The notes under the pieces: model-generated
The model's database searches: none
What the model was told of the DNA's origin: nothing
What the model saw: only the letters and a program-made list of their open reading frames with translations
Position numbers and translations under genes: made by a program
NCBI GenBank assembly: GCA_002269645.1
Contig: NIVC01000657.1
Span: 62,001-126,000 of the forward strand
Length of the DNA: 64,000 bases
Reading direction: 5' to 3'
From: Macrostomum lignano
Lineage: Eukaryota
Shown: piece after piece, positions 834-50,526 of the stretch
How the letters are laid out: every line of letters starts with the position of its first letter
Numbering within the stretch: position 1 is the stretch's first letter

Positions 834-1000
834 TATGTCAAGGCTTATGGGGGGAATTGCTGAGATGTCAAGGCTTATGGGGGGAATTGCTGAGATGTCA
901 AGGCTTATGGGGGGAATTGCTGAGATGTCAAGGCTTATGCGGGGGAATTGCTGAGATGTCAAGGCTTATGTGGAATTGCTGAGATTTCAAGGCTTATGGG
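834..1000. repeat. 30-bp tandem minisatellite (AAGGCTTATGGGGGGAATTGCTGAGATGTC), about 5 copies
   Basis: Unit seen repeating directly at 841, 871 and 901; a degenerate array of the same unit lies at about 6810-7130. Confidence 0.9.
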
Positions 1001-1677
1001 GGACAAGCTGTTGAAACCCGCGGATTTTGAACCCGGGGAATTCCAATACCCGGAACTACTTTTGCATGTATTCTGAAATCTAAGGCCATACACAAACAAA
1101 AACTTGTTAATAGTTAGTAGGATAGAGGTAGACATAAAATGGAGCACATTCGTTTAAAATTAGGGTTTGAGACATTGTTGGCTGGGGTACTGCGCAGAAT
1201 GTCAGGCAATGTCTGTCTGACTCTAAAACATATATTGCTAAACTCTGGTCTCTCCCTGTCTCTCCCTACATCCCTTGGATCCTTTAAAATTTCTATCGTC
1301 TCTTTGTTTCCTCTCATCTCTCTCGTCCCTCGTCTCTCCTCTCTCGTCTCTCCTCTCTCCCCTCTTCTTTCGTATCTTCCCTCATCTCTCTTCTCTTTCA
1401 TTTCTCTTATCTCATATCTTGTCTCTTCTTTTCTCTCTCCTCTCTACTTTTTCGTTTTCTCTCTTCTCTCTCCCCCTCTCCTCTCTCCTCTCACCCCCTC
1501 TTCTCTCTTATCTTCCTTCTCCTTTCTATTTCTTTTCTCTCTTCTCTTAACTCTCTCATCTCTCCCCTGTTCTCTCGTCTCTTCCCGCACCTCTTTTCTC
1601 TCTCGTCTTTGCTCTCTCATCTTTCCTTTCTCTTCTTTTTATCTTTTCTCTCTTATCTCTTCTCATTTCTCTCTGCT

Positions 1678-1752
<75 letters not shown>

Positions 1753-1766
1753 GTCTTTCTCTCTTA

Positions 1767-1862
<96 letters not shown>

Positions 1863-2646
1863 TATCTCTCCTCCTCTCTCTACTCTCTCCCCTCTCCATT
1901 CTCCTCTTTCCTCTCCTCTCTTCTCACTCACTTCTCTACCTTTGTCTCTCCTCTCGTCTCTGTAACCTCTCCTCTGTTCTCTCTACTCTCCCATCTTTTA
2001 TCTGTTCACTCTCGTCTCTGCTCTCTCATCCCCCTCTTTAATCTGGCATCTCTGTCTTATATGTTCTCTCACCTCTCTCCTCTGTACTCTTTTCTTTCCC
2101 CTCTTTTGACTCCTCACTTTCCTTTCTCCTTTCTTCTTTTCTCTTCTCTTCCCTTTTCTATACTCTGTCTCCCTCTCTTCTCTCACTCCACTCTCCTCTC
2201 TCCGTTATCTCTCATCTCTCATTTCTTATCTCTCCTTCAACCTCTCTCATCTCTACAACCTTAGAGATGTAGAGATGTATCTTTATCTCTTCTCTCTTCC
2301 CTTTACTCTCTCATCTCTTCTTTCACCTGTTTCCTCTCTGCTCTCCTCTCTGCTCTCTGCTCTCTCCTCTCATCTGCAGCTCTCTGCTCTCTCATCTCTA
2401 CTCTCTCTTCTCGCTTTTCCTCTCTCCCCTCTTCTCCCCCTCTCTCTCATCGTCCTCACCCCTCATCTCTCCTATTATCTTTTATCTTTTCTTTTATCCC
2501 CTCTGTCGCCTCTCCTCTCTTCGAATCGTCTATTCGTTCTTCTTTCCACTTTCATCTGCCCCTCAGCTATGAGCTGGATTCTTTATCTGGCCTTTGAGGT
2601 AAAAGTCTGCCCATCCCTGCTTGGAAAGCCAGTTTGTGGGACGTAG
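834..2646. repeat. Composite dispersed repeat, copy 1 (30-bp minisatellite + conserved block + CT-rich tract + conserved tail)
   Basis: Blocks ATAGAGGT...CAGAATGTCAGGCAATGTCTGTCTGACTC (about 1120-1225) and CTGCCCCTCAGC..ATGAGCTGGATT...TTTGTGGGACGTAGT (about 2555-2646) recur in the same order at about 7355-7470 and 8690-8778. Confidence 0.8.
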
Positions 2647-6809: not shown

Positions 6810-8778
6810 ATGTCAAGGCTTACACATTTCACTGCTAAGATGTCATTGTCAAGGCTTATGGGGAATTGCTGGGATGTCAAGGCTTACTGGGGGATTTCTG
6901 GGATGAGGCTTACAGCTGGGGGAATCGCTGAGACGTCGAGGCTAATGGGAGGAGTTGCTGGGATGTCAAGGCTTATGGGGAAATTGCTCAGACTCCAAGG
7001 CTTAGTGGGAAAATTTCTAGGATGACATGGCTTATTGGAGGAATTGCTGAGACGTCGAGGCTTATGGGGAATTGCTGGGATGTCAAAGCTTATGGGGAAT
7101 TGCTGGGATGTCCAGGCTTACTGGAAGCATGGGTCCATTCTTTATTATTTTCAGCCATATTTTCATTTTTATTTTTGCGCTCCCCAAACGGGCTGGATTG
7201 CTAGTATCCACTAAATGTATCGTGCTCAATATTTACAATATAAATCGCAGTCGCTTGCCTCGTATCAAGCGTAATATCGTTCTACAATCTAAAGTGAAGT
7301 CTTCAGACATTGAAAATCTACGGTCTACTCAAACAAAAAATTGTTAATAGTTAGCATAGAGGTACATAAAATGGAGTACATTCGTGTAAAATTAGGACTT
7401 GAGGCAAACATTGATATTGTTGGCTGGGGTGCTGCACAGAATGTCAGGCAATGTCTGTCTGACTCGTAGAACATGTATTGGCAAACTCTGGCCTCTGCCT
7501 CTGCCTCTCCCTACATTCCTTGGATCCTTTGAAACTTCTATCTTCTCTTCTGTTTCCTCTCTCTTCTCTCTCATCTCTCCTCTCTCCTCTCTTCTCTCTT
7601 CGCATCTCTTCTCTTCTTTCCTCTCTCCTCTCTCCTTTCTCCTCTCTCCCCTCTTCTCTCGTCTCTTCCCCCATCTCTCTTTGCTTTCATCTCTTTTATA
7701 TCATCTCTTCTCTCTTTCCTCTCTCATCTCTTCCCTCCTCTCTTCTCTCTCGTTCTGCTCTCTAATCTCTCCTTTCTCCTCTGTTCTCTCTCTTCTCTCT
7801 CCCCTCTTCTCACTCCTCTCCTCTCTCAACACTTCCCTCATCTCTCCTCTCTTATCTCTTCTTATTTCTTTCTGCTCTCTCCCTCTCTCTCTCCCTCTCT
7901 CTCTTTCTTATCTCTCCTCTCATCTCTCTCTGCTCTCTCCAGTCCCATCTCTCCTCCTCCTCTCTACTCTCTCCCCTCTCCATTATTCTCTTTCCTCTCC
8001 TTTTTCCATTTTCCCTTCTCTCTCCCTTTTCCCTTATCTCCCCTGTCCTCTACCCCTTCTCTCCCCTCCTCTCTTATCTCTTCACTCACTTTTCTCTCTC
8101 CCTTTGTCTCACCTCTCATCTCTCATCTCTTTTCTCTTTTCTCTTAACTCTCCTCTGCTCTCTCGTCTCCCCTCTCCCATCTGTCATCTTTACTCTTAAA
8201 TGTTCTCTCACCTTTCTCCTCTGTACTCTTTTCTTTCCCCTCTTTTCACCGATCTTTCTTTCCTTTCTCCTTTCTTCTCTTCTCTTCTCTTCCCTCTTCT
8301 ATACTCTCTCCCTCTCTTGTCTTCTCTCTTATCTTTCAATACTCCTCTCTCCTCCTTCATCTCTCATCTCTCTTTCTCATTTCTCCTTACACCTCTCTCA
8401 TCTCTATAACTTTATCTCTTCTCACTTGCCTTTACTCTCTAATCTCTCCTTTTATCTCTTTCCTCTCACCTCGCTGCTCTCCTCTCTTCTGTCTCTTCTC
8501 ATCTGCAGCTCTCTGCTATTTCATTCCATCTCTTTCATCTCGCTTCTCCTATCTCCCCTCTTCTCCCCCTCTCTCTAATCGTCCTCACCCCCTCGTCTCT
8601 CGTATTATATTTTATCTTTTCTCTTATCCCCTCTCTCGCCTCTCCTCTTTTTTCTAATCGTCTATTTCTTCTTTTTTCCGCTCTCATCTGCCCCTCAGCG
8701 ATGAGCTGGATTTTTTATCTGGCCTTGGAGATAATAGTCTGCTCATCCCTGCTTAGAAAGCCAATTTGTGGGACGTAG
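6810..8778. repeat. Composite dispersed repeat, copy 2 (diverged)
   Basis: Same order of modules as 834-2646, including the CT-rich tract that produces the spurious Leu/Ser ORFs. Confidence 0.8.
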
Positions 8779-9872
8779 TCTCAATAAACTAAAAGTCTAG
8801 CGTTGTTGGTGTGTATGTTGCAAATTATGTGAAAGTTAAAAATTAAAATAGCCTATAGCCTTTTCCGGAAAATTTGCAGCTTTCCCATATATAAGTTTCG
8901 ACGCTGACTTGCTGGTAGTCTAGAAGAAAAGTTGCAACATACACACAAACAACGCTAGACTTTTAGTATATTGGACTTTTAGTATATTGAGAAGAGAGAA
9001 GAGGGAGATAGTACATCAGTGATTGCGGTGATCGGTGATGTATTATCATGCATATTGCTCTCTTTATCAAGATCGACCTACTAATACTTGTGGGGGGGGG
9101 GCAAATTACAATGCCAGCTATAGGCAAAATCTGCCGCGGGCCCATGCAGTAACTTAGATTTTTTTTGGGCCGGCCTAATTATAGGTGCATGGAGTCTGGG
9201 CATTGAGTATAGGATTTAGCTGAGAAAGTCTATTGGACAGAAACCGTGGTCCCTGGCAGTATCACCTCCAGGTTTTCGTTTCCACATATGCATGTAGCTA
9301 TAGCTGTCATATCTATAAACTCTATGTCTATTTTATCTATGCTACATATATGTACATGTTAAATTCTATCTTTTTAAAGCTGTAGAATGTGCAAACGCGG
9401 TAATAGTATATAGGATCACCCATTTTATAAACTTTAAAAAAGTTCCATATACAAAAGTTACCAACTACATACATTTGTGTACCATCCTAAGCAATAAGCA
9501 ATATCATATCTCACATTCATGAAAAGATTACTGTAGCTTATACCAAGCCAAAATATTTGCTACCTTTTTAAACGGATTGAAACGTTATGCAGCTCTTCCG
9601 TTGGTTATTAGTGTCTAAAAATAGAATCGAGGCTTTCCTCTGTAATGATTAAATTTAGCTGCAATGTACTCAACTCGTATTGAAGGGTGTTCAGCTAAAA
9701 CACGTGTGTGTACATACAATGCATGCACATCTGCAAGGCAATTCCACCGATTTTCCGTTGATCTATAAAAACCATTCTGTTGCTTGACCCAAGATTCTGA
9801 TGCATATCTGTACTGTACACTGTACGGCTACTACTGCGAGCTACAAGCATGTAGACGCGTATTAGTACAATT

Positions 9873-12800
9873 ATGATACTGCCACTTCAAAGAGAAGCTG
9901 GTCCAGACAACGAAGAGAACAACAATGATGGTTGGTCCGCTTTGCACTTCGCTAGCCACCGCGGCGACCTAGAGTCAATTCAGAGCCTCATCAAATCCGG
10001 AGTTGACGTCAATCTTCAAGCTAAGTGCGGAAGAACAGCATTGCATCTGGCTATATACGAAGGGCATGTTGAGGCTGTTGAAATTCTGCTATTTGAGGGT
10101 CTGGCTAATCCCAATGCTCCATCAGCCAACAGTATCTTGCCCATTCACCTGGCAGTTGTTAAAAAATCGGTTTCAATGCTGCATCTTCTGATCAATGCCG
10201 GTGCTGACGTGAATCTACAACAAGACTCTGAACCGCCGCCTATCCTGCTAGCTATTGTTGCTGATTTCTCCACTGGCGCAGATTTTCTGATTTCACACGG
10301 AGCAAATGTCGACTCGTGCACCACGTCGAGTACTTTTATAGACATTTGCAAAGTTTTAACCGACGATTCAGCTCCCAATCACTTCACTTCAAGAGAGAAA
10401 TCTATTCTCAGCCGCCCAGGGGTGCCAGCAATGGTAGCCGCCACCCTCCGAGGAGATCAATACATCGTCAAACGACTCATCGACTCCGCAGCCATCGTAG
10501 AGGCTCACGGTAAACTCGGCTCGGCGGCTTTGCATCACGCGGCGTGCAGCAACAGATTCAATATCATGAAGGATCTGCTGAAATCTTCACTGGATGTTGA
10601 TGTGCAAAACAACTGGGGCAATTCGGCTCTTCATTTAGCCGTGAAGAATGGTTACACCGACTTAGTCGATATGCTGCTTGATTACGGTGCAAATATAAAC
10701 ATTCAGAACTGTAACGATGGCTGTACTCCGCTGCATAGGGCAACCGACTATAACCACATAAAGGTCGTCACACAGCTGGTTAATCGTGGCGCCAATATCA
10801 ACGCCCAAGACTGTGCCGGTTGTTCGCCTTTACACCTGGCAGCTGCTAGTGACCTGCCAAAAATGGTTGCTCATCTTATTTCTCTAGGCGCTACAGTTGA
10901 CTTAGTGTCGAATCAGGGTTACACGCCGCTGTGCTATGCTACCGAGATTGGATCAATCGGCGTTGTTCGCGTTCTAGTTAACGCTGGCGCTCAAATTGAT
11001 TTTCGATCGATTTCATCGTCTGCTGCTACTCCCATGGAGTTAGCTGCGCTTAACGGTCATCTAGGAGTTTTAGCTGAACTTGCCGCACATTCTGGAGCAA
11101 TGCTCGATAAAATTGATGCTCAATCTGATGGATTGTCCATATTGCACATGGCCTCGTTAGGCGGTCACTCTCATATTGTTCATCACCTGGTTATGCACTG
11201 TGGCGTCTGTGTGGATCAGCTGACAACTAAATCTGGTCTGACTCCCTTGCACATAGCTGCCCAGTTAGGTAACAAAGATGTAATAACTAAGCTAGTCGAA
11301 TTAGGGGCCAATTTGAATTCGTCAACGACCGATGGCTGGCGGCCTTTAGACTACGCCTTCGCGTTGGGACACAAAGAAGCTGTAAGAGTTTTGCTTCAGA
11401 GCTGCACCAGTCTGCCAAGAAAAAATGCACAATTATGCATCACTTCGATTGAATTGCACGAAAGAATGTTAAATGCCGGCTTCTGCGCTGCCAATGCCTC
11501 TGTGCAGAGAGGCTGCGCTGGTGTTCTTGAGGAACTCACTCGACTTCGCAACGGGATAAACTGCTATCTATTAGGCAGTTTTGCTGACGGCTGGGCCAGC
11601 AGCCTGACTCGAGGCGACTCTAGAATTGGCAGAGATTCTGACTTAGATTTGACCTGCATTGAGCCGCGACTTGTTCTATCTTTCGTTGACGGAACCAACG
11701 ACTGTACTAATCAGAACTTTAGAAATCCTGTCGGAACTGTTTGCTATGAAAATGGTCACCTTTGCTACGAAGTACAATGTAAGTTTATTTAGAATATGCA
11801 TGCACAACTTGCTGTGCTATGTTGGTTTAATTATAAATTCTACATTTTTTTCTCACGCAACCGTCATTTTAGCAACAAGGCCAAACAAAGTAATCCCTGG
11901 ATCTTGCCTAAGACCTGCGATTGATAGGATAACCGCCCATCCCTGCGCTCGCTATCCTCTGATCAAGCCACTTCAACCAGACTATAAGACAAGCATTCCC
12001 AAACACGTGCTGCAGCAGCTGCAAAAAGTATTGACCTCGTCAGTGTGTCACGCAGTTTCAGCAGCTCCTCCGGGACTTGAAGGCCGACGGATGCGACTGA
12101 GCAGTACATTTCTAGAGCTAGTTCTCATGAGCAATCTCAGCACTGTTCAAGGTCAACTATACGTGCTTATCAAGTTTGTGATAAAGCTTGTGATTAATAA
12201 GCGAACTCCTGGGTTGAAAACGTACCACGCCAAGACCTTATTTTTTTCACATGCTTGACAGTATGCCTGCTGGCGACTGGAGACCCGATAATCTTATTCA
12301 ACTGTTGGATCTGTCGCTAGATAAACTTATTGGTTTCCTTTTGGAAGATGATACTAGCGTGTCCAGGCACCACTGTATGCCTCATTTCTTCTTTCAGAAT
12401 GCTGTCATATTTCAGAAAGAGAACCACAGATCCAAGAGCTGCATTGCTAACTATGTTGAACAAGTTAAGCGCGATCTGCAACTCGTACTGTCAGACTTTG
12501 CGGCTAACCTTTATAATAAAACTGACACTTTTATTGAGTTTCATCCGTTCGCCATCATGCCGCTGCTGCACGACGTATCGGCGCCAAGACCGAGCGGCAG
12601 TGCAACCGTTAGCTATCTGGAAATTTACGATCTAGTCCGTCATGTTGTACTGTTTTTAAGTCAGAACGACGCTGATCAGAGCTTTGAAAGCCTGATGCAG
12701 CTTACGAATAGGCTACCGGATAGTGCAAGAACTACAAGAGACTGCCTTCAAATTATGCTGTGCATGAAGTTTGACAAGCCACTGCCAGACTCAACTAGGC

Positions 12801-15800
12801 AAGACTGTGCAGCCTGTTGCGGTATTCCTTATTCATTAGGAAACAGTGAAATGTCGACCCACGAAGCACGAAGCCTGATATGGAAACACCTGCAAGAGAA
12901 CAATACCGCCTGGAAGTTTTGTTTCGAGTTCATCGAAGATCTGGACTTTCCATTTCTTCCGGCGCGTATCAGAGAAATATTTCTAATGCGAACAGGCGGT
13001 TACGGAAGCAGCACCAAATACTGCTATATCAACTTTGATGCTTTAAAGAAAGCCTTGAATTTAGAAGCCTTCACGAAAGACCATGACACTAGTCTGACGA
13101 TGGCTCGGAGATGGTTGGACCAGCTTCGCTCAAAAGATGCAGACCTGCACGAGCTGCTGACCGCATTGCAGTATTGCAACGACCAGTCGCTCGTGTTGAG
13201 CGCTGTTCGCGAGCACCTGAAGGAAATCTCAGAAGCGGGACTTCACACCAAATTTGTTAAAATATTAGAGCGATGGGTAAGTGTCCATTTTTATTTAAGT
13301 CTGTTAAACAAAATTTCTCACGAATATACTACTTTTTGTACGCTAACACTACGTAATGCGCAGATAGAGCCGGGTTTTCAGATGTTTTGACGCAAAAAAC
13401 GCAAATTATACTACTATCTGAAAAATGAAGTAAGTAGTATACAAAAACGCTATCCTAAGCGTGATATGGCAATATGTAGTCGTAATAATCCATGTGCTCA
13501 TATATGTACATTAATTCCATGTACATTAATCCCTATCTATCTCAAATTGGATATGTACATTAATTCCATGTACATTAATCCCTATCCCAAATTGTCTATC
13601 CCCAATTCTATATGTACACTCACATTAATCTACAGTGTCATCCCCAGCGCGCGCACCAAAATTACAACTCGAAACCCTACTACATGTACAATCTCATCCA
13701 AATGAGTCAACATTCAAGTTTTACAAACCTCGTTATATACACATTACCATTTATATGTCAATTATTCAAAACCTACATGTAGCTAATTACACTACTACCT
13801 TTAGTAGAGTTACAAATCAAGATTCTATTGAAAAAGACTGTAGTCATATAGTTTTCACATTGGAAAAGCGTATATTTTCATTTCAATAATTGAAAAAGAG
13901 AGCAAAAACAGTAAGGAGACAACAGCAAGTTGAGACTTAATTATAGCCTGTACTACCAAACCCTCCTGCACCGCGAATTGAGTGGCTGCCAGCGGCCTCC
14001 TCATCGCCATTCCCTCTAGTATATCCTCACCCCTCGAAGCCCCTATACTGAATGTTGAATCACCCTTTAACTCGGACCATAGTCAAATTCAACCCTGTTC
14101 GAAAACAGCCACCCCTCCGATGTTTACCAGACACAGCGCAGACCCCATAACAAATCGAGCTAAATTTTAACACTCGCCCCTGTTCTCTCTGTCCCCCCTT
14201 CTAAATGCCAAGGAATTTCGACCCTCTCTCCATTTTCAGTGTACAGACAGACCTTTCCACAACACAGACCATATATTAAACTTCAAAACCCCTCTCTTCT
14301 CCGATTACGTCATCCATGCCGCCCCAGATAGCAAGAAACCAACTTTTAATGCACACATCAACCCCGCGAGCAAATCCGAGTCCGCCAACCTCTACCTGCA
14401 TTGACAAACCCCAGCTGCATTTGTAAATGTACACAGCCTATGAATCAGTGTCTCCACCGCATGCAATTCTGATTTACTTGATTCTAAACTTTGTAAATTG
14501 TATAAGTCACCCTTGCGTTATACTAGAAGTAGTGAAGTCCACATATTTAAATACGTGAGGCTATTCAATTCTGCCTCTCCGCCTCCCCTACCTTCTCACT
14601 TCAAGCTTTCAGAATTGGTCTTTGAGACGGTCGGTTTAATCTGTTAGAAGCAGGAATGAATCATGCACTGACCTCTCCATACAAAGTAAAGTTGGAATTT
14701 CAGACAAGAAATTTGGTTATTTTAAAAGCTAAATGACTAGAAATGCACATTTTTTCATTAAAATGCAGCTTTTTACAGTTTTTTTACGATTTTAACCTTA
14801 AAATGCAGACTTTATTGATCAAAATCAGTAGTTTCATCACTAGAAACCATACTTTCAACAGCTAATTTGTCCAAATGTCGCTTTCAACTTGACCTTAGAC
14901 TGCTTTTAAGCAGGAATGAACCCCACACAAACATCCACAAGCCAGCCCAAAATCATCCAAAGACATGGCTATTGAAGCCTAAATTGCTAGAAATTCGCAT
15001 TTTTTTCATAAGAAAATACAAATTTTCACAGTTTTTATGCATTTTTACGTTAAAATGCAGACTTTATTGATCAAAATCAGTAGTTTCATCACTAGAAACC
15101 ATACTTTCAGCAACTAATTTGTCCAAATATCGCTTTCAACTTGACCTTAGACAGCTTTTAAGCAGGAATGAACCCCCCCACGAACATACACAAGCTAGCC
15201 CAAAATCATCCAAAGACGGCTGTTGAAGACTCAATTGCTAGAAATGAGCATTTTTTCATAAGAAAACACAAATTTTCACAGTTTTTACGCATTTTTTTCG
15301 TTAAAATGCATACTTTATTGATCAAAATCAGTAATTCATCACTAAAAACCACAATTTTAACACAAAATTATCACAAATGCTACTTCTGGAACTCTGAGAC
15401 AGCTTTGAGCAGGAATTATAATCGCACACGGATTACCCGAGCCAGTCCAATATTCCACTGAAGCCAGGGTTTTTTAAAGCTGAATTGTTAGAATTGCTCA
15501 TTCTTTCGTTTAATAAATGACAATTTTCACAGTTTTATTATTTTATAACGTTAAAATGCGAAATGTATTGGTCAAACTTAGTAGTTTCATCCCAAAAAGC
15601 CATAATTTCAACCGCTAATTTGTCCAAATGCTGATTTCAAAGTTGGCAAGAGACAGCTTTCGAGCAGGAATGAGTCACACACTGATCTCCATATGCACAC
15701 CCCGGCCCAAGTTGGAATTCCACCCAAGACATTTTCATTGAAAGCTAAATTACTAGAAATTGCACATTTTCGTTTTAAAAAGGTCAATTTTCACAGTTTT

Positions 15801-18800
15801 TACTCTTTTTAACGTTAAAATGCTGACTTTATTGAACAAAATTAATCACTTCATCAGCAGAAACCATAATTTTTACAACTTAATGCTGTTTCATCATTCA
15901 AATGTATGTATTTGGTACGTGTAATACCCCTCAAGAAGTCAGGGAAGGGATTATTCTTGAATATTGGGTTAAAACGTACAGTTTGCTATAAACCTAGCTA
16001 TAATAATTTTAACATATACAGTCGGCGAAGCGGCCCGTTGATTTCGATTGACATTTAAACTGTCCCTCCCATGCCAGACCTCTCTCTCTCTCCTGCACCC
16101 ACCGAGAAAAGTGACTCATGCGGCAATCAGTTTGACAGGTTTAGTATATTACTGAATTGGCAAAACAGCCAACACACAATGTTCATTAGACTCGTCTTCA
16201 CAGCACAGACCCATGTAGAACAGAACCACTCGTCCCTGTCTCTCTGACCTTACCATTTCTAACTGTCAAGGAATTCCGACCCTCCCTCTCCAATTTCAGT
16301 GTACAAACAGATATTTTCACAGCACAGACTCATATATTGAGCCTCCTCCAACCAAAACCCTATCTTGATTACGTCATCCACCTCCCCCATAGAAGCAGTT
16401 AGCAAGAATCAAAATTTTTCGATGCACATATGAACACTGTGAACCATGCAAAATAGCACATCTACGGGTCGATTTTGATTGACAATTTAATACCTTTTGT
16501 TGATGCTGCTGTGTACAGTAGTCTTATTTCCGAAGCTCCTAGCAGTCATCTTTTAGATGTGGTGAATCAGTGTTGTTTTTGCCAACTTTACATCTTGATT
16601 CATCCTCCAAATTCTTCAACTCTGACCATATTCAATAATTTAACCCATGCAAGTAGATTTGCCAATTCGCCAAATTGCCAATACGAATGGGGCCAGAGGA
16701 CCCACCCAAATCGAGCCCTTGTCTCTCTCAGGCCTCTCTCTCCTACACATACCCCAGAAAAGTGACTCATGAGGCAATCAGTTTAACAGGTTCAGTATAC
16801 TGAATTGGCAAAACAGCAAACACCCAATGGTCAATGGACTCGTCTTCGCAGCACAGACCATTTTGAATAAAGCCAAAACACACATACACCCCTATTCTCT
16901 GACCAAACCTTTCCATTTCTAGTTGTCAACGAAATTCGACCGGCCTCTCTCTCAATCCCAATGTACATTTTGACGAAGCAAGCAGATCTTTTCACAGCAC
17001 GGACCCAGCCTCCCCCAACCAAAGCCCTATCTCTGATTACGTCATCTATACATCCCCATAGAAGCAGTTAGCAAGAAAAAAATTTCGATGCGCATATATG
17101 AACAATGCGAACCAAGCAAATCCGCGCGTCTACCAAAGCCAACCCTACCCTGCGTGCTGTAATTGCATTTGTCAATGTACACACCCTATGAATCAGTGTC
17201 TCCTTCTTTGGAACACACGAAGGCATTAGTCAGAAAGTTTGGATGCAATTAAAAACTCTCTCGATGCTTTGCGTATAAACGAGTAATCGATTGAATCAAT
17301 TGTACACTTGACACATTTAATTACGTGCTGCCATGCAACGGAAAGACAGGATAATGGGGTGGGTGGTCACGCAGCCTCATTCTCTCTTTCCTACTGATTT
17401 TTCATTATCTATCAATCTCAGCTCTTTCCGGGGCAACTCGCGCATTTGTGCATAGTTCCTCATCAGATTTACCACATGTTCATTTACATGTGATGTACAT
17501 ATGCAAGCGGCAGCCGATTTAAACCTGAGAAATGGTTGAAGCACTCCCCCGACTATGACTAAATGCACGTACGTTCAGTCAAATACAGGAAAATTTGACA
17601 CCCGTAGTATGAAGATGAAATCTTCACGAAAGCTTCACATGTTTATCTTTCTCTGTGGAAATGACGATAGTTTCTCAAAAAAATCTGTCATAGGCCCAAT
17701 ATAGCAGTTTAAATATTTTCACGAAAATGTCGCATTATTCAAAGAACTGATTTTTGCAAACTCTACTGTCAGTAGGAAGATGAGTTTTCATAGAGACATT
17801 TTGTAAAACATAGACTAAACTTTCAAATCATTCGTTTACACGACCAACTGTCTATATTAATGGTGGGGTTATTATTACTTTACAGAAAAACGCATGTCCT
17901 GTGTTACGACACTGCCTAGCAACCGTATAATTTTTGCAGGTCAAGGAGCATTAATACATGAACTAACACTCCTATTTTACATTCATTGAGAGGCGGCGGC
18001 AGCGGGCAGAGGGGGGCCGGACCGTGACTGTGCGCAGCACAGTCCCTGTCTCTACTGCCGCCTCCGCCCGCGCCGCCGCCTCTCAATGAATGTAAAATAG
18101 GAGTGTTAGTTCATGTATTAATGCTCCTTGACCTGCAAAAATTATACGGTTGCTAGGCAGTGTCGTAACACAGGACATGCGTTTTTCTGTAAAGTAATAA
18201 TAACCCCACCATTAATATAGACAGTTGGTCGTGTAAACGAATGATTTGAAAGTTTAGTCTATGTTTTACAAAATGTCTCTATGAAAACTCATCTTCCTAC
18301 TGACAGTAGAGTTTGCAAAAATCAGTTCTTTGAATAATGCGACATTTTCGTGAAAATATTTAAACTGCTATATTGGGCCTATGACAGATTTTTTTGAGAA
18401 ACTATCGTCATTTCCACAGAGAAAGATAAACATGTGAAGCTTTCGTGAAGATTTCATCTTCATACTACGGGTGTCAAATTTTCCTGTATTTGACTGAACG
18501 TACGTGCATTTAGTCATAGTCGGGGGAGTGCTTCAACCATTTCTCAGGTTTAAATCGGCTGCCGCTTGCATATGTACATCACATGTAAATGAACATGTGG
18601 TAAATCTGATGAGGAACTATGCACAAATGCGCGAGTTGCCCCGGAAAGAGCTGAGATTGATAGATAATGAAAAATCAGTAGGAAAGAGAGAATGAGGCTG
18701 CGTGACCACCCACCCCATTATCCTGTCTTTCCGTTGCATGGCAGCACGTAATTAAATGTGTCAAGTGTACAATTGATTCAATCGATTACTCGTTTATACG

Positions 18801-21800
18801 CAAAGCATCGAGAGAGTTTTTAATTGCATCCAAACTTTCTGACTAATGCCTTCGTGTGTTCCAAAGAAGGAGACACTGATTCATAGGGTGTGTACATTGA
18901 CAAATGCAATTACAGCACGCAGGGTAGGGTTGGCTTTGGTAGACGCGCGGATTTGCTTGGTTCGCATTGTTCATATATGCGCATCGAAATTTTTTTCTTG
19001 CTAACTGCTTCTATGGGGATGTATAGATGACGTAATCAGAGATAGGGCTTTGGTTGGGGGAGGCTGGGTCCGTGCTGTGAAAAGATCTGCTTGCTTCGTC
19101 AAAATGTACATTGGGATTGAGAGAGAGGCCGGTCGAATTTCGTTGACAACTAGAAATGGAAAGGTTTGGTCAGAGAATAGGGGTGTATGTGTGTTTTGGC
19201 TTTATTCAAAATGGTCTGTGCTGCGAAGACGAGTCCATTGACCATTGGGTGTTTGCTGTTTTGCCAATTCAGTATACTGAACCTGTTAAACTGATTGCCT
19301 CATGAGTCACTTTTCTGGGGTATGTGTAGGAGAGAGAGGCCTGAGAGAGACAAGGGCTCGATTTGGGTGGGTCCTCTGGCCCCATTCGTATTGGCAATTT
19401 GGCGAATTGGCAAATCTACTTGCATGGGTTAAATTATTGAATATGGTCAGAGTTGAAGAATTTGGAGGATGAATCAAGATGTAAAGTTGGCAAAAACAAC
19501 ACTGATTCACCACATCTAAAAGATGACTGCTAGGAGCTTCGGAAATAAGACTACTGTACACAGCAGCATCAACAAAAGGTATTAAATTGTCAATCAAAAT
19601 CGACCCGTAGATGTGCTATTTTGCATGGTTCACAGTGTTCATATGTGCATCGAAAAATTTTGATTCTTGCTAACTGCTTCTATGGGGGGGTGGATGACGT
19701 AATCAAGATAGGGTTTTGGTTGGAGGAGGCTCAATATATGAGTCTGTGCTGTGAAAATATCTGTTTGTACACTGAAATTGGAGAGGGAGGGTCGGAATTC
19801 CTTGACAGTTAGAAATGGTAAGGTCAGAGAGACAGGGACGAGTGGTTCTGTTCTACATGGGTCTGTGCTGTGAAGACGAGTCTAATGAACATTGTGTGTT
19901 GGCTGTTTTGCCAATTCAGTAATATACTAAACCTGTCAAACTGATTGCCGCATGAGTCACTTTTCTCGGTGGGTGCAGGAGAGAGAGAGAGGTCTGGCAT
20001 GGGAGGGACAGTTTAAATGTCAATCGAAATCAACGGGCCGCTTCGCCGACTGTATATGTTAAAATTATTATAGCTAGGTTTATAGCAAACTGTACGTTTT
20101 AACCCAATATTCAAGAATAATCCCTTCCCTGACTTCTTGAGGGGTATTACACGTACCAAATACATACATTTGAATGATGAAACAGCATTAAGTTGTAAAA
20201 ATTATGGTTTCTGCTGATGAAGTGATTAATTTTGTTCAATAAAGTCAGCATTTTAACGTTAAAAAGAGTAAAAACTGTGAAAATTGACCTTTTTAAAACG
20301 AAAATGTGCAATTTCTAGTAATTTAGCTTTCAATGAAAATGTCTTGGGTGGAATTCCAACTTGGGCCGGGGTGTGCATATGGAGATCAGTGTGTGACTCA
20401 TTCCTGCTCGAAAGCTGTCTCTTGCCAACTTTGAAATCAGCATTTGGACAAATTAGCGGTTGAAATTATGGCTTTTTGGGATGAAACTACTAAGTTTGAC
20501 CAATACATTTCGCATTTTAACGTTATAAAATAATAAAACTGTGAAAATTGTCATTTATTAAACGAAAGAATGAGCAATTCTAACAATTCAGCTTTAAAAA
20601 ACCCTGGCTTCAGTGGAATATTGGACTGGCTCGGGTAATCCGTGTGCGATTATAATTCCTGCTCAAAGCTGTCTCAGAGTTCCAGAAGTAGCATTTGTGA
20701 TAATTTTGTGTTAAAATTGTGGTTTTTAGTGATGAATTACTGATTTTGATCAATAAAGTATGCATTTTAACGAAAAAAATGCGTAAAAACTGTGAAAATT
20801 TGTGTTTTCTTATGAAAAAATGCTCATTTCTAGCAATTGAGTCTTCAACAGCCGTCTTTGGATGATTTTGGGCTAGCTTGTGTATGTTCGTGGGGGGGTT
20901 CATTCCTGCTTAAAAGCTGTCTAAGGTCAAGTTGAAAGCGATATTTGGACAAATTAGTTGCTGAAAGTATGGTTTCTAGTGATGAAACTACTGATTTTGA
21001 TCAATAAAGTCTGCATTTTAACGTAAAAATGCATAAAAACTGTGAAAATTTGTATTTTCTTATGAAAAAAATGCGAATTTCTAGCAATTTAGGCTTCAAT
21101 AGCCATGTCTTTGGATGATTTTGGGCTGGCTTGTGGATGTTTGTGTGGGGTTCATTCCTGCTTAAAAGCAGTCTAAGGTCAAGTTGAAAGCGACATTTGG
21201 ACAAATTAGCTGTTGAAAGTATGGTTTCTAGTGATGAAACTACTGATTTTGATCAATAAAGTCTGCATTTTAAGGTTAAAATCGTAAAAAAACTGTAAAA
21301 AGCTGCATTTTAATGAAAAAATGTGCATTTCTAGTCATTTAGCTTTTAAAATAACCAAATTTCTTGTCTGAAATTCCAACTTTACTTTGTATGGAGAGGT
21401 CAGTGCATGATTCATTCCTGCTTCTAACAGATTAAACCGACCGTCTCAAAGACCAATTCTGAAAGCTTGAAGTGAGAAGGTAGGGGAGGCGGAGAGGCAG
21501 AATTGAATAGCCTCACGTATTTAAATATGTGGACTTCACTACTTCTAGTATAACGCAAGGGTGACTTATACAATTTACAAAGTTTAGAATCAAGTAAATC
21601 AGAATTGCATGCGGTGGAGACACTGATTCATAGGCTGTGTACATTTACAAATGCAGCTGGGGTTTGTCAATGCAGGTAGAGGTTGGCGGACTCGGATTTG
21701 CTCGCGGGGGTTGATGTGTGCATTAAAAGTTGGTTTCTTGCTATCTGGGGCGGCATGGATGACGTAATCGGAGAAGAGAGGGGTTTTGAAGTTTAATATA

Positions 21801-22825
21801 TGGTCTGTGTTGTGGAAAGGTCTGTCTGTACACTGAAAATGGAGAGAGGGTCGAAATTCCTTGGCATTTAGAAGGGGGGACAGAGAGAACAGGGGCGAGT
21901 GTTAAAATTTAGCTCGATTTGTTATGGGGTCTGCGCTGTGTCTGGTAAACATCGGAGGGGTGGCTGTTTTCGAACAGGGTTGAATTTGACTATGGTCCGA
22001 GTTAAAGGGTGATTCAACATTCAGTATAGGGGCTTCGAGGGGTGAGGATATACTAGAGGGAATGGCGATGAGGAGGCCGCTGGCAGCCACTCAATTCGCG
22101 GTGCAGGAGGGTTTGGTAGTACAGGCTATAATTAAGTCTCAACTTGCTGTTGTCTCCTTACTGTTTTTGCTCTCTTTTTCAATTATTGAAATGAAAATAT
22201 ACGCTTTTCCAATGTGAAAACTATATGACTACAGTCTTTTTCAATAGAATCTTGATTTGTAACTCTACTAAAGGTAGTAGTGTAATTAGCTACATGTAGG
22301 TTTTGAATAATTGACATATAAATGGTAATGTGTATATAACGAGGTTTGTAAAACTTGAATGTTGACTCATTTGGATGAGATTGTACATGTAGTAGGGTTT
22401 CGAGTTGTAATTTTGGTGCGCGCGCTGGGGATGACACTGTAGATTAATGTGAGTGTACATATAGAATTGGGGATAGACAATTTGGGATAGGGATTAATGT
22501 ACATGGAATTAATGTACATATCCAATTTGAGATAGATAGGGATTAATGTACATGGAATTAATGTACATATATGAGCACATGGATTATTACGACTACATAT
22601 TGCCATATCACGCTTAGGATAGCGTTTTTGTATACTACTTACTTCATTTTTCAGATAGTAGTATAATTTGCGTTTTTTGCGTCAAAACATCTGAAAACCC
22701 GGCTCTATCTGCGCATTACGTAGTGCTAACAGTCTTGCGTGAAATGTTTCAATTCATTTTAGAAACCGAAGGACATTCTGTCTTATCAAATGGAAAGAAG
22801 AGAACAATCTAAAAAATATGGTTGA
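9873..22825 (+). CDS. Ankyrin-repeat + Mab-21/cGAS-like nucleotidyltransferase (cGLR-like), about 1120 aa; exons 9873-11778, 11873-13276 (one extra T at about 12241-12247), 22763-22825
   Basis: About 14 ankyrin repeats (GWSALHFA, GRTALHLA, GCTPLHRA, GLTPLHIA etc.). Then the NTase motif LLGSF...DSDLD, the third-acidic motif IDRITAHPC, and the Mab-21 C-lobe motifs RLSSTFLE, LKTYHAKTLFF, W..DNL and CMPHFF. GTAAGT donors at 11779 and 13277 match in phase with AG acceptors at 11872 and 22762. The start codon and last exon are less certain. Confidence 0.85.
13347..22725. mobile_element. Giant foldback (palindromic) non-autonomous DNA transposon-like element, 9379 bp, termini CACTA...TAGTG
   Basis: Positions i and 36072-i were complementary wherever checked from 13347/22725 to 18000/18072, and every ORF pair in the track mirrors exactly with coordinate sum 36072. 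Flanks carry a direct repeat: CTAA at 13343-13346 and 22726-22729. No transposase ORF is visible. Confidence 0.88.
14640..15850. repeat. About 250-bp tandem repeat x5 inside the left arm (mirrored at 20222-21432)
   Basis: GCAGGAAT anchor at 14650, 14910, 15162, 15409 and 15664, with shared TTTATTGATCAAAATCAGTAGTTTCATCACTA-like blocks. Confidence 0.85.
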
Positions 22826-27742: not shown

Positions 27743-28930
27743 GGGGTCGCCATCACAAGCTTGAAAAGTCACATCGTCGAAAAGTTTAGCAACCACCATC
27801 ACAAGCTTGAAAAGTCACATCGTCGAAAAGTTTAGCAACCACCATCACAAGCTCGAAAAGTCACATCGTCGAAAAGTTTAGCAACCACCATCACAAGCTT
27901 GAAAAGTCACATCGTCGAAAAGTTTAGCAACCACCATCACAAGCTCGAAAAGTCACATCGTCGAAAAGTTTAGCAACCACCATCACAAGCTCGAAAAGTC
28001 ACATCGTCGAAAAGTTTAGCAACCACCATCACAAGCTCGAAAAGTCACATCGTCGAAAAGTTTAGCAACCACCATCACAAGCTCGAAAAGTCACATCGTC
28101 GAAAAGTTTTGCATCCACCATCACAAGCTTTAAAAGTCACATCGTCGAAAAGTTTAGCAACCACCATCACAAGCTTGAAAAGTCACATCGTCGAAAAGTT
28201 TAGCAACCACCATCACAAGCTTGAAAAGTCACATCGTCGAAAAGTTTAGCAACCACCATCACAAGCTCGAAAAGTCACATCGTCGAAAAGTTTTGCATCC
28301 ACCATCACAAGCTTGAAAAGTCACATCGTCGAAAAGTTTAGCAACCACCATCACAAGCTCGAAAAGTCACATCGTCGAAAAGTTTAGCAACCACCATCAC
28401 AAGCTTGAAAAGTCACATCGTCGAAAAGTTTAGCAACCACCATCACAAGCTTGAAAAGTCACATCGTCGAAAAGTTTAGCAACCACCATCACAAGCTCGA
28501 AAAGTCACATCGTCGAAAAGTTTAGCAACCACCATCACAAGCTTGAAAAGTCACATCGTCGAAAAGTTTAGCAACCACCATCACAAGCTTGAAAAGTCAC
28601 ATCGTCGAAAAGTTTAGCAACCACCATCACAAGCTCGAAAAGTCACATCGTCGAAAAGTTTAGCAACCACCATCACAAGCTTGAAAAGTCACATCGTCGA
28701 AAAGTTTAGCAACCACCATCACAAGCTTGAAAAGTCACATCGTCGAAAAGCATCCATCATCATAAGCTCAGGCTCAGGCACGGGCTCTAACCCTAACCCT
28801 TTTCGAGCTTGTGATGGCGGCTGCTAAGTCCGTTTTCGACGATGTGACTTATCGAGCTTATGACTTTTCGAGATTGTGATGATGGATACTTTTCGACGAT
28901 GTGACTTTTCAAGTTTGTGATGTGACTCCC
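27743..28930. mobile_element. MITE/foldback-like element with an expanded 46-bp subterminal array (about 21 copies), a (CCCTAA)-containing core and short inverted copies of the unit
   Basis: 46-bp unit ACCACCATCACAAGCTTGAAAAGTCACATCGTCGAAAAGTTTAGCA at about 27750-28750; CTAACCCTAACCCT at 28787-28800; reverse-complement unit fragments at 28801-28925; imperfect terminal inverted repeat GGGGTCGCCATCACAAG / GTTTGTGATGTGACTCCC. Confidence 0.7.
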
Positions 28931-35205: not shown

Positions 35206-37689
35206 CTAGGGCGGTGCAGACACTAAACCGGCTGGCCCGTGTCCCAGCTGCTGACCGCCAACTGTCGACTCCAAGGGTTTGAAGCCGAGCTCCTCAACTG
35301 GGATACCGTATTGTCGCAGCTTCGCCTCGTAGGTCTTCAATAAATCGTTGTGCGCTTTGCAAACTCGAGCTAATTCGTACTGCAGATCTTTGATCGCACT
35401 GTTCTTTGAGTCCAAAACATCCTGAAAAAGAGACACCAAATATTGCTTATACTTTAAAAAGTCGTATGAACTCGTTATTGCAATTCGAATGTAAAAACAT
35501 TAGTCCACTCACCTCCAATTTCCTCGTGACTACAGTGAGCGCAGTTGGATCCAGATTCGACGCTGACAGCACCTCATTGAGCTGGGCGTCTTTCTTCTCT
35601 AACGTGTCGGCCAGAGTGCCCAGCTTCCGCTCCAGGAGAATATTCTTCAAGCCGCTCTTCTGCTGCACCTCGTGAATGGCTTTCTCGAACTTCCGATAAA
35701 GTTCGTCGCGTTCTTCTTGCAGCTGAAAATGAAAAAGTCACAATTTTTAACCTCATAGAAAAAGTGCCGTTGTACAAAGAGAAAAGCAGCATTTATAACA
35801 GCGCTTACCTTTTCAAACCTCTGATCCAGCACTTCGTGTTCCCATTCTAGCTTCTTTCTTTCAGCTTCCATCATCTTGATTCGCGCTTTGGCATTCTTCA
35901 AGCTCTGCTTGTCCTTCTCGTAATTAGCCAGGGTTCGCTTGAGCTCGGCGTTCTCATCCTGCGCCTGGCGCAACGGCTCGCTCAGCCTCCGATTCTCCGC
36001 CATCACCTCGGCCATCTGCTTCTCCAAGCGATCTTCTTTGGCCTTCATCTCGTCGATTTTCTCCTTCAAAGTGTTGATCAAAGCCAAGTTGTTTAGCGTG
36101 ATGTCGTTATAGTAGTTCTTAATATCGCTGAACGCTTTCTCGTGATTCTTCATCAGCGTGTTGATCTGATCGTTCTTGCGCTCCTCGACCTCGTGGATTT
36201 CCGTCTTGCGTCGCAGGTCCATCTCGTCGCGCAGCTGGCGCATTTTCTTCTCGTACTTCTGCTCGATCTCCTGCGCCTGGCGCTCAAAATCGTTTCGCAC
36301 CTCAGTCAGGTGGGCCTCGTAGTGACGCTTCAACTCCTTCACTGACTGTTGGTTAGCCAGCTCGTGCTCCTTCAGGTCCACCTTCAGGCGGCGTTTGTCC
36401 TTCTTCAGTTCGGACTCCTCGTCACGGTGCTCATCCTGAGCTAGCTTGAGCTGTACAGTGTTCTCAGCCTTCAGCTCAGAAATGTTATTCTGATGCTCGT
36501 AGAGCAGATGCTTCACCTTCTGCTTGTAGACTTTGATCTCCAGCTGGTGCCTCTCTTCGGCGTCTTCCATCTCTCGGTCTTTGTTTCTCAATTCCGCTTT
36601 CTTCTCCTCTAGCTGACGCTTGGTAATCTCCCAGAACGTGTTGATCTTGTCCCGTTCCAGCTGGAAGTAGTTTCGCTCCTCGCGTTCGCGCTGCAGCTCA
36701 TCGCGGATGCGGTTGACGTGCTCCTCCAGATCCTCCTTGGTCATCTCCGCCGTGGAGATGCCATCAATGACTGTCGGGGTTTTGGATTTTCCAGACTTCT
36801 TGCCCTTTTTGCCGGACTTCTTTCCCTTCTTGCCTTTCTTTCCCTGAAATGAAAAAATGTGGAAAGGTATAAAAAATGATTTAAGTTTTAAAGCAAAGTT
36901 GAAAAAATCTTATTCGTCATTGATTGGAAGCCAAATTATATAAAGATTGTAGAATTTTTATTGAAGAGTAGTATTGTATTCTTTCGCATTTTAAAACTAT
37001 TATTTTGATTTCCATAGCACTTTGCTTTTTATGCATTCAGTGATGAATAAAATATTAGCTTTTAAAAGTTTGCTCAGGTCTATATTTTGAAAGAGACAAT
37101 GGTTGAATGGTGTTTTTTCCTGAGCATCTTCTTGAGTCTTTGAAGATTTCCTACGTATTTGCATATAAAATTTATTTTTGTAAATTTTTCCAGAACCAAA
37201 TTGGAGTAGTTATTTATTAATTAAAGTACGAGCTACTTAGCTGCAAAGATATGCAGTTGATTTGTTGTTTCCGCTGAGAACAAAAATTCTCTTACTTATA
37301 CAGTTTGGACTAGAGTGTTTTAAAATTTGTCACTGGTTAGTGTTGTGATTTTTATGTTTTATATCACTATAATTAGTTTGAGTCAGCTTAACAATAGCAG
37401 GACGCCACAGAGCATTCAGTGATTATTCAAAAGCGCACATTACTTTAGAAAAATAGTGTCCAGATTCGACTCGACTAAAAAATCCACCCTAAAGTCGAGC
37501 CCATTCACTTTAATAATACTGGAGTGTGTAAACCGTAAACATGGACAAGTGGCACTTGTGACTTGTTGGCTTCAAACTTGTTATTTGAATATTTGGCTCA
37601 ATTTGCTAAGCGCAATTGCTAAGTCGAAAACGTAGTTGATTAAAGATACACCATCGAAAAGCCAAAAACTACAATACTCAACTTACCAT
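35206..37689 (-). CDS. GAS8: Growth-arrest-specific 8 / dynein regulatory complex subunit 4; exons 37689-37687 (ATG only), 36843-35809, 35722-35513, 35421-35206
   Basis: Lys/Gly-rich N-terminus, [72 protein letters not shown]; all junctions phase 0 with GT-AG. Confidence 0.95.
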
Positions 37690-49973: not shown

Positions 49974-50068
<95 letters not shown>

Positions 50069-50132
50069 ATGTCTGTGTCTGTCTGTCTGTGTGTCCGTCT
50101 GTCTGTCTGTCTGTCTGTCTGTCTGTGTGTCC

Positions 50133-50194
<62 letters not shown>

Positions 50195-50224
50195 GTGTGT
50201 CTGTGTCTGTCTGTCTGTGTGTCC

Positions 50225-50282
<58 letters not shown>

Positions 50283-50375
50283 GTGTGTGTCTGTCTGTCT
50301 GTGTCTGTCTGTCTGCCTGTCTGTCTGTCTGTGTCTGTCTGTCTGCCTGTCTGTCTGTCTGTCTGTCTGTCTGCC

Positions 50376-50408
<33 letters not shown>

Positions 50409-50458: not shown

Positions 50459-50526
<68 letters not shown>

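What the first reader, a model, noticed from the sequence alone, without database searches (positions are those of the whole stretch)
13347..22725. 9.4-kb near-perfect palindromic transposon-like element with 4.65-kb arms
Seen: the two arms mirror without detectable indels (coordinate sum 36072 throughout), the ends are CACTA...TAGTG, a direct repeat flanks them, and there is no transposase. Removing the element restores an ordinary 103-nt intron and an in-frame last exon, which argues for a true insertion rather than a fold-back read artefact. Established: CAC...GTG ends with a 4-bp TSD fit the CMC superfamily (Chapaev-like), and multi-kb perfect palindromes are normally unstable. Inference: this is a giant non-autonomous foldback family made almost entirely of its own TIR, either very young or homogenised arm-to-arm.
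Basis: partly seen in the sequence, partly recalled or inferred. Interest (0 to 1): 0.9.

Follow-up and report, generated by a model that had tools for sequence, protein, structure and literature searches.

The report
Giant palindromic transposon-like insertion in flatworm
A 9.4-kb stretch of non-coding DNA built as an almost perfect mirror image of itself sits in the last intron of a Macrostomum lignano gene and has the ends and flanking duplication of a cut-and-paste transposon; it is an unusually large example of a known kind (foldback elements), and only this one copy could be seen.

Summary
Window 13347-22725 (9,379 nt) consists of two 4,654-nt inverted arms with no substitutions. A 71-nt GC-rich, imperfectly palindromic centre joins the arms. 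The ends are CACTACG...CGTAGTG, flanked by CTAA/CTAA. The arms hold no ORF over 97 aa, no Pfam or Rfam match, and no protein relative among 1.84 billion representatives.

The window is Macrostomum lignano contig NIVC01000657.1 (Mlig_3_7: PacBio CLR, Canu, Pilon). The host is an ankyrin + Mab-21 gene. Removing the element leaves a 103-nt GTAAGT...TTTTAG intron, like the gene's other 94-nt intron.

A fold-back read artefact is unlikely: the two flanks are not mirror images, the centre is asymmetric, and no adaptor core is present.

Best reading: a real, young, non-autonomous cut-and-paste element of foldback architecture, with one arm copied from the other by fold-back synthesis. CMC/Chapaev-like ends fit but are not proven, because the TSD can also be read as 2 or 5 bp.

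That it represents a family could not be tested: no other copy is in the window, and the rest of the genome was out of reach. It is a new member of a known kind, of moderate interest.

The parts
13343..13346 (.). Left copy of the putative target-site duplication, CTAA
   Evidence: the left flank ends ...GTACGCTAA. The same 4-mer follows the right end. Chance is about 0.005.
13347..18000 (.). Left arm (4,654 nt), starting CACTACGTAATGCGCAGATAGAGCC
   Evidence: 100% complementary to 18072-22725 apart from two 1-nt indels. No ORF over 97 aa, no Pfam match, no Rfam match.
13347..13358 (.). Terminal 12-mer CACTACGTAATG, itself a near-palindrome around TACGTA; candidate transposase recognition and cleavage end
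   Evidence: unique to the two ends of the element within the window. Its reverse complement, CATTACGTAGTG, differs at 2 positions.
13504..13586 (.). Subterminal 15-bp repeats ATGTACATTAAT(T/C)CC, about 4 copies, mirrored at about 22486-22568; candidate accessory binding sites (inferred)
14717..15880 (.). About 251-bp tandem repeat, 5 copies at 65-93% identity, mirrored at 20191-21354
   Evidence: The copies are far more diverged from one another than the two arms are.
16084..17120 (.). Two copies of an approximately 650-bp direct repeat (about 77% identity), mirrored at about 18952-19987
18001..18071 (.). 71-nt GC-rich middle domain: an imperfect continuation of the palindrome with an 8-bp tip hairpin (18026-18044)
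18072..22725 (.). Right arm (4,654 nt), ending ...GGCTCTATCTGCGCATTACGTAGTG
22726..22729 (.). Right copy of the putative target-site duplication, CTAA
9873..13276 (+). Host gene (ankyrin repeats + Mab-21 nucleotidyltransferase-like). Exons are 9873-11778 and 11873-13276, with a 94-nt intron between them and a 1-nt frameshift at a T7 run near 12242
   Evidence: PF12796, PF20266. Paralogues P0122-P0125 align along the whole length.
13277..13342 (+). 5' part of the interrupted intron (donor GTAAGT)
22730..22762 (+). 3' part of the interrupted intron (acceptor TTTTAG)
22763..22825 (+). Predicted last exon, KPKDILSYQMERREQSKKYG plus stop, in frame with ...KILERW
   Evidence: It shows only weak similarity to the tails of paralogues P0124/P0125. 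No transcript evidence was available.

Best explanation
This is a real insertion of a non-coding, non-autonomous cut-and-paste (TIR) DNA transposon with foldback architecture. It lies in the last intron of a Macrostomum lignano ankyrin/Mab-21 gene.

Shown:
- two effectively identical 4.65-kb inverted arms;
- a 71-nt asymmetric middle domain;
- CAC...GTG ends;
- a flanking CTAA direct repeat;
- no coding capacity;
- flanks that rejoin into a normal 103-nt intron.

Inferred:
1. A transposase supplied in trans binds the near-palindromic terminal 12-mer, and perhaps the subterminal 15-bp repeats. It cuts at CAC/GTG and integrates with a 4-bp stagger. That pattern fits the CMC (Chapaev-like) group best.
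2. The arms are identical because one was copied from the other recently. During repair of a break or excision gap, a 3' end that had copied one arm folded back on the short imperfect inverted repeat now at the centre. It then primed synthesis back out to the terminus, giving a perfect palindrome around an asymmetric loop. The internal repeats within an arm are only 65-93% identical. The arm sequence is therefore old, while the palindrome is young.
3. Whether the fold-back happened before this copy transposed (a propagating foldback family) or in place at an older insertion (a one-off derivative) cannot be decided from the window.
For: - The palindrome boundaries coincide with CAC/GTG and with a flanking 4-bp direct repeat (chance about 0.005).
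- The two flanks are unrelated to each other's reverse complement. Joined, they form a GTAAGT...TTTTAG intron of 103 nt, like the neighbouring 94-nt intron of the same gene.
- The predicted last exon is in frame. Paralogues all continue 11-53 residues past the same point.
- There is no ORF, Pfam, Rfam or protein relative in the arms.
- The arms contain tandem and dispersed internal repeats, as in described foldback elements (Tetris, PMC4079207; Galileo, PMC4168063).
- Chapaev hallmarks are a 3-4 bp TSD with invariable 5'-CAC...GTG-3' ends (PMC4079192).
- The centre is an imperfect hairpin, not a clean fold point. This is what fold-back priming on a pre-existing short inverted repeat predicts.
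- The only two arm differences are homopolymer indels. The same error class causes a 1-nt frameshift at a T7 run in the host gene.
Against: - Only one copy was seen, so mobility rests on a single TSD whose length is ambiguous (2, 4 or 5 bp).
- No transposase partner was found, and none could be looked for.
- The sequence comes from a PacBio CLR/Canu assembly polished with Pilon. No reads could be inspected. Short-read polishing could have made similar arms look identical.
- Multi-kb perfect palindromes are generally unstable in vivo (established knowledge), which makes a perfect 9.4-kb one a priori suspicious.
- No transcript evidence was available for the intron or the last exon.
Confidence: 0.6

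Rival explanations
1. One reading: this is one member of a propagating family of giant foldback elements that transpose as 9.4-kb palindromes. The arms are kept identical by youth or by arm-to-arm conversion.
For: Foldback families with long, repeat-rich TIRs and no ORF are well documented. The ends and TSD are intact, so the copy looks competent for transposition.
Against: There is no second copy in 64 kb, and no access to the rest of the genome. The sequence fits a one-off derivative formed in place equally well. A perfect 4.65-kb hairpin is a poor substrate for replication and, probably, for synapsis of the ends.
Confidence: 0.3
2. Assembly artefact. The palindrome, or its perfection, was produced by fold-back or chimeric long reads, or by consensus and short-read polishing, rather than existing as such in the genome.
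For: The assembly is Canu 1.4 on PacBio CLR reads with Pilon polishing using Bowtie2-mapped short reads (PMC5730564). Fold-back reads are a recognised long-read artefact (PMC12870357). Residual homopolymer errors are visible in this very region. Multi-mapping short reads would homogenise two near-identical arms.
Against: - A fold-back read gives X followed by the reverse complement of X, so the right flank would mirror the left flank. It does not.
- The palindrome ends exactly at CAC/GTG beside a direct repeat.
- The flanks restore an intron.
- The centre is a 71-nt asymmetric sequence, not a clean fold.
- The SMRTbell adaptor core (sequence recalled from memory) is absent from the window.
- The cited survey saw virtually no fold-back artefacts in PacBio genomic data.
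- Polishing could exaggerate identity but cannot create the structure.
Confidence: 0.1
3. It is a transposon, but of another superfamily. One option is Tc1/mariner-like, reading the TSD as TA and the ends as A-CACTACG.../...CGTAGTG-C. The other is Transib-like, reading the TSD as CTAAC (5 bp) with CAC ends.
For:: the junctions are ...ACGCTAA|CACTACG and CGTAGTG|CTAACAG. The flanking direct repeat can therefore be read as TA, CTAA or CTAAC. Transib also has CAC termini and a 5-bp TSD (own knowledge).
Against: The TA reading needs a mismatch at the first TIR base. The 5-bp reading makes one end a base shorter than the other. Both are odd beside 4,654 otherwise perfect positions. The 4-bp reading needs no exception.
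Confidence: 0.12
4. It is not a transposon. A palindromic DNA, such as a hairpin-capped break product or extrachromosomal inverted dimer, was captured at a double-strand break in the intron.
For: Large palindromes can arise from breaks next to short inverted repeats (established knowledge). The centre has such a repeat.
Against: Capture by end joining does not predict a clean 4-bp duplication of the target, or CAC...GTG ends with a near-palindromic 12-mer at both termini.
Confidence: 0.04

Closest known systems
Foldback elements of animals (Drosophila FB, Tetris, Galileo/Kepler/Newton; sea-urchin TU; C. elegans Tc4)
   Same: - Very long terminal inverted repeats make up most of the element, around a short middle domain.
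- The arms contain tandem repeats.
- Most copies have no ORF.
- Mobilisation is in trans.
(PMC4079207; PMC4168063; Tc4 and TU from own knowledge.)
   Different: - The arms here are 4.65 kb, 99% of the element, and identical to each other, longer than the arms I recall for those elements (own knowledge; their arm lengths were not looked up here).
- The putative TSD is 4 bp with CAC...GTG ends. Tetris and FB have 8-10 bp (Mutator-like) and Galileo has 7-8 bp (P superfamily).
- Only one copy is known.
CMC superfamily, Chapaev group
   Same: Invariable 5'-CAC...GTG-3' termini and a 3-4 bp TSD (PMC4079192). The first five bases are CACTA.
   Different: - No DDE transposase is in the element, and no partner was identified.
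- The Chapaev3 subgroup makes a TWA TSD between A and T, which does not fit CTAA in GCTAAC.
- The Chapaev and CMC literature read here does not mention kilobase-scale TIRs or foldback architecture; no search for such a report was made.
Mu killer of maize (inverted duplication of part of a MuDR element)
   Same: It is a one-off inverted duplication of transposon sequence whose transcript forms a long hairpin (own knowledge; the preprint on Mu silencing was listed but not read). This is the model for the 'one-off derivative' reading, and for a possible small-RNA consequence.
   Different: Mu killer is not bounded by both element termini and is not itself a mobile unit. No small-RNA or expression data exist here.
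Large palindromes formed by fold-back priming at short inverted repeats next to a break (yeast, Tetrahymena rDNA, gene amplification in mammalian cells)
   Same: The predicted product is two perfect arms around an asymmetric loop bounded by the original short inverted repeat. That is the anatomy of 17980-18090. The comparison rests on own knowledge.
   Different: Those events are chromosomal rearrangements, not bounded insertions with a TSD.

Membership tests
CMC (Chapaev-Mirage-CACTA) superfamily / Chapaev | Invariable 5'-CAC ... GTG-3' termini | tested here: met
   the ends are CACTACG... and ...CGTAGTG. The criterion is taken from PMC4079192.
CMC (Chapaev-Mirage-CACTA) superfamily / Chapaev | 3-4 bp target-site duplication | tested here: inconclusive
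   CTAA flanks both ends. This is the only reading that keeps the TIR perfect. However, it comes from one copy only, and TA or CTAAC readings are possible.
CMC (Chapaev-Mirage-CACTA) superfamily / Chapaev | DDE transposase with CMC-specific residues, in the element or in an autonomous partner with the same ends | not testable with these tools
   It is absent from the element, and no ORF of 150 aa or more in the window looks like a transposase. The rest of the M. lignano genome could not be searched.
CMC (Chapaev-Mirage-CACTA) superfamily / Chapaev | Repbase rule for non-autonomous elements: same TSD length and terminal positions 1-11 matching a classified family with at most 1 mismatch | not testable with these tools
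   The rule is quoted in PMC4455052. No Repbase or Dfam library was available.
Foldback elements (structural class) | Long inverted arms forming most of the element around a short middle domain | tested here: met
   2 x 4,654 nt plus 71 nt.
Foldback elements (structural class) | Arms containing internal tandem repeats; no coding capacity | tested here: met
   (251 bp x5, 15 bp x4-5, 650 bp x2). (no ORF, domain or relative).
Foldback elements (structural class) | Dispersed multi-copy family with TSDs at independent sites | not testable with these tools
   There is one copy in the window. The terminal 24-mer is absent from the metagenome and prokaryote collections, which are uninformative for a flatworm.
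Drosophila FB / Mutator-like foldbacks | 8-10 bp TSD | tested here: not met
   the flanking direct repeat is at most 5 bp. The criterion is from PMC4079207.
Transib | 5-bp TSD with CAC termini | tested here: inconclusive
   CTAAC can be read on both sides only if the first C of the left end is assigned to the TSD, which makes the ends unequal.
Long-read fold-back or missed-adaptor assembly artefact | Right flank is the reverse complement of the left flank; clean symmetric fold point or adaptor at the centre | tested here: not met
   complementarity ends at 13347/22725; the centre is a 71-nt asymmetric sequence; no SMRTbell adaptor core (sequence recalled from memory).

The most novel reading that the evidence does not exclude
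M. lignano carries a currently active Chapaev-like transposon system whose non-autonomous derivatives propagate as multi-kilobase perfect palindromes. At each round of transposition or gap repair, one arm is regenerated from the other through a snap-back intermediate, so the arms stay identical however old the family is.
Probability: 0.08. Interest if true: 0.65.

Novelty: new member of a known kind. Interest (0 to 1): 0.35.

Why it matters
If the structure is real, it points to recent cut-and-paste transposon activity in M. lignano. This flatworm is a regeneration model in which heterologous transposon vectors did not mediate integration (PMC5730564). An endogenous active system with defined ends could therefore be a useful tool.

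It would also be one of the longest perfect inverted repeats tolerated inside an animal gene. Transcribed with its host intron, it would form a 4.65-kb double-stranded RNA stem. That makes it a candidate source of small RNAs, and it lies in a gene of the Mab-21/cGAS-like family.

On the practical side, it is a useful test case for palindromes in the Mlig_3_7 assembly.

Tried and rejected
1. Looked for other copies. blastn of an arm against the rest of the window and the terminal 25-mer with up to 3 mismatches found only the two ends. A 14-mer with 3 mismatches gave chance-level hits.

2. Tried to reach the homeologous or duplicated locus for an empty site.
- The junction ORF is not on record.
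- P0121, a 97%-identical ankyrin ORF from another locus, is not on record.
- A chimeric protein query meant to catch three neighbouring genes returned only host-gene paralogues.

3. Looked up nine element ORFs and the 639-aa host ORF by exact sequence in the 15-billion-protein collection: none is present. phmmer of the concatenated element ORFs gave 0 hits.

4. Searched for the terminal 24-mer in the metagenome and prokaryote genome collections: 0 hits. This was expected and is uninformative.

5. Searched the literature for M. lignano DNA-transposon families. The only finding was that DNA transposons make up 3.05% of Mlig_3_7. There is no superfamily breakdown and no foldback report.

6. Rejected a head-to-head dimer of two complete elements, because the inner ends of the arms carry no CGTAGTG terminus. 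Rejected a double-Ds-type nested insertion, because that would not give a perfect palindrome.

7. Wasik et al. 2015 (PMC4603488) is not held. I could not check how the PacBio DNA was prepared.
Full report
**Where the window comes from.** A conserved coiled-coil ORF in the window (35647-36744, minus strand) is 100% identical to a Macrostomum lignano GAS8/DRC4 protein. The contig that encodes it matches the window exactly: the reverse complement of L001 equals window 25206-47788. The contig is NIVC01000657.1 of assembly GCA_002269645.1 (Mlig_3_7). The window is therefore NIVC01000657.1:62001-126000, and the feature lies at 75347-84725 of that record. Mlig_3_7 was built from PacBio CLR reads with Canu 1.4 and polished with Pilon, using Bowtie2-mapped Illumina reads and RNA-seq (PMC5730564). 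This history matters when judging a perfect palindrome.

**The observation.**
- The repeat finder and a global alignment show two arms, 13347-18000 and 18072-22725, each 4,654 nt, with no substitution.
Between 14362 and 16382 the mirror is shifted by one base, because of two compensating single-base indels.
- Both indels sit in C-runs: C4 versus C5, and CCTCCCCC versus C7.
- The 71 nt between the arms are GC-rich and only partly self-complementary. As single-stranded DNA they fold into a bulged extension of the stem, capped by a perfect 8-bp hairpin with a 3-nt loop.
- Complementarity stops exactly at CAC/GTG: the next outward pair, 13346/22726, is a mismatch.
- Both ends are followed by CTAA. 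The chance of a 4-mer match at two fixed positions is about 0.005 with this composition.

**Content of the arms.**
- The longest ORF is 97 aa.
- A six-frame Pfam scan at E<=1 gave only noise.
- Rfam at E<=0.1 gave nothing.
- Eleven concatenated ORFs found no relative among 1.84 billion representative proteins.
- Each arm carries a 15-bp subterminal repeat (about 4 copies, 13504-13586). It also carries five copies of an approximately 251-bp tandem unit (65-93% identical) and two copies of an approximately 650-bp unit (about 77%).
- These internal repeats are much more diverged than the two arms are from each other. The arm sequence is therefore old, while the arm-to-arm duplication, or its homogenisation, is recent.
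- With 0 differences in 4,654 sites, and assuming 1e-9 to 1e-8 substitutions per site per generation, the 95% upper bound on age is about 3e4 to 3e5 generations. This is inference and depends on the assumed rate and on the assembly being right.

**The host gene.**
- ORFs at 9873-11792, 11659-12258 and 12251-13390 are one gene.
- The first ORF is full of ankyrin repeats and ends in a nucleotidyltransferase-like motif, GSFADGW...DSDLD.
- The rest carries a Mab-21_C domain (PF20266). It aligns along its whole length with M. lignano Mab-21 paralogues P0122-P0125.
- The first frame change is a canonical 94-nt intron, GTAAGT...TTTTAG (11779-11872).
- The second frame change is a 1-nt frameshift at a T7 run near 12242. 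Removing one base restores ...TYHAKTLFFYMLD..., matching the paralogues' ...TYHAKNLLFYMLD....
- That frameshift is either a residual homopolymer error or a real lesion. It belongs to the same class as the two arm indels.
- The element lies 70 nt after a GTAAGT donor (13277) and 33 nt before a TTTTAG acceptor (22762). Without the element and one CTAA, the intron is 103 nt.
- The next 20 codons plus stop are in frame. All paralogues continue 11-53 residues beyond the equivalent of ...KILER. The predicted tail has only faint similarity to those of P0124 and P0125.
- No transcript evidence was available. The GenBank annotation deliberately drops transcripts that overlap repeats, which may be why this gene has no annotated protein.

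**Real or artefact.** A fold-back or missed-adaptor read gives a sequence followed by its own reverse complement, so the right flank would mirror the left flank and the fold point would be clean or contain adaptor. None of this is seen:
- the flanks are different sequences;
- together they make an intron;
- the palindrome ends at a transposon-like terminus next to a direct repeat;
- the centre is a 71-nt asymmetric sequence;
- the core of the SMRTbell adaptor, recalled from memory, is absent.

A survey of fold-back artefacts found essentially none in PacBio genomic data (PMC12870357). Polishing can still have affected the degree of identity: short reads map equally well to both arms, so Pilon would tend to make similar arms identical. 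I put about 0.1 on the structure itself being artefactual. I put a higher, unquantified chance on the identity being somewhat overstated.

**What it is.** The anatomy is that of a foldback-type, non-autonomous TIR transposon: long repeat-bearing arms, a short middle domain, no ORF, defined ends and a flanking duplication. Comparable elements are Tetris and Galileo and, from my own knowledge, FB, TU and Tc4.

The ends and the TSD point to the CMC group. Published Chapaev hallmarks are a 3-4 bp TSD and invariable CAC...GTG termini (PMC4079192). The Chapaev3 subgroup does not fit, since it makes a TWA TSD between A and T.

The assignment is weak for three reasons. It rests on one copy. The junctions (...ACGCTAA|CACTACG, CGTAGTG|CTAACAG) also allow a TA or a CTAAC reading. 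No transposase could be sought. Repbase's rule for non-autonomous elements, same TSD length plus terminal 11-nt match (PMC4455052), could not be applied without a repeat library.

**How the palindrome arose (inferred).** Perfect arms change abruptly into an imperfect, asymmetric centre bounded by GC-rich short inverted repeats. Fold-back priming predicts exactly this. A 3' end that has copied one arm, during repair of a break or of an excision gap, snaps back on a short internal inverted repeat. It then copies the same arm outwards again. Template switching during gap repair is the accepted source of rearranged transposon copies (PMC4168063).

This can happen in two ways that the window cannot separate. 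Or it can happen in place at an older, ordinary insertion, giving a one-off derivative in which the TSD dates from the original insertion.

**What could not be done.**
- No tool here searches eukaryotic genomes by DNA.
- Attempts to reach the duplicated copy of the locus through protein look-ups failed.
- The last homology search returned only paralogues without contigs.
- Copy number, TSD consistency, an autonomous partner, an empty site and read support all remain open. They are listed as decisive next steps.

**Verdict.**
- The artefact reading is unlikely.
- The transposon reading is well supported.
- 'CMC/Chapaev-like' is plausible but unproven.
- 'Family' is untested.
- It is a very large and very clean example of a known kind of element, not a new kind. 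Interest is moderate (0.35).

Noticed in passing
window 12237-12250: A 1-nt frameshift at a T7 run splits the host ankyrin/Mab-21 ORF. Deleting one base restores ...TYHAKTLFFYMLD..., matching the paralogues. It is either a residual PacBio homopolymer error or a real disabling mutation.
   Followed up: partly
window 9873-13276 and 22763-22825: The host gene is an ankyrin-repeat + Mab-21 (cGAS-like nucleotidyltransferase motif GSFADGW...DSDLD) protein of about 1,120 aa. M. lignano has several paralogues at 35-43% identity (P0122-P0125) and a 97%-identical second copy of the ankyrin part (P0121). The gene is not in the GenBank protein set.
   Followed up: partly
window 8782-8973: A MITE-like inverted repeat with 45-nt arms, 93% complementary, and a 102-nt spacer. 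It is followed by a 16-bp tandem duplication, GACTTTTAGTATATTG x2 (8958-8989).
   Followed up: no
window 28717-28922: A 53-nt inverted repeat (92% complementary, 100-nt spacer) made of units of the adjacent 46-bp minisatellite (27750-28750). The array appears to reverse orientation at its end.
   Followed up: no
window 26669-63002 (many sites): Extreme density of minisatellites with 14-55 bp units, each array 0.4-1.4 kb. Many lie in introns of the ATG27-domain gene and of the SMC_N/RAD50-like gene. There is also a 1.1-kb (TGTC)n tract at 49974-51067. Some translate as long spurious ORFs on both strands.
   Followed up: no
window 835-2448 and 6847-8405: The same 30-bp minisatellite (ATGTCAAGGCTTATGGGGGGAATTGCTGAG) followed by a long CT-rich tract occurs twice, about 6 kb apart. 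This suggests a segmental direct duplication.
   Followed up: no
window 57417-58643 (-): A 408-aa ORF with RNase H (PF00075, E=2.5e-13) and RVT_3 domains. It is probably a retroelement fragment.
   Followed up: partly
window 13347-13358 and 22714-22725: The terminal 12-mer CACTACGTAATG is itself nearly palindromic around TACGTA, differing from its reverse complement at 2 positions. This could reflect symmetric binding by a transposase dimer.
   Followed up: no
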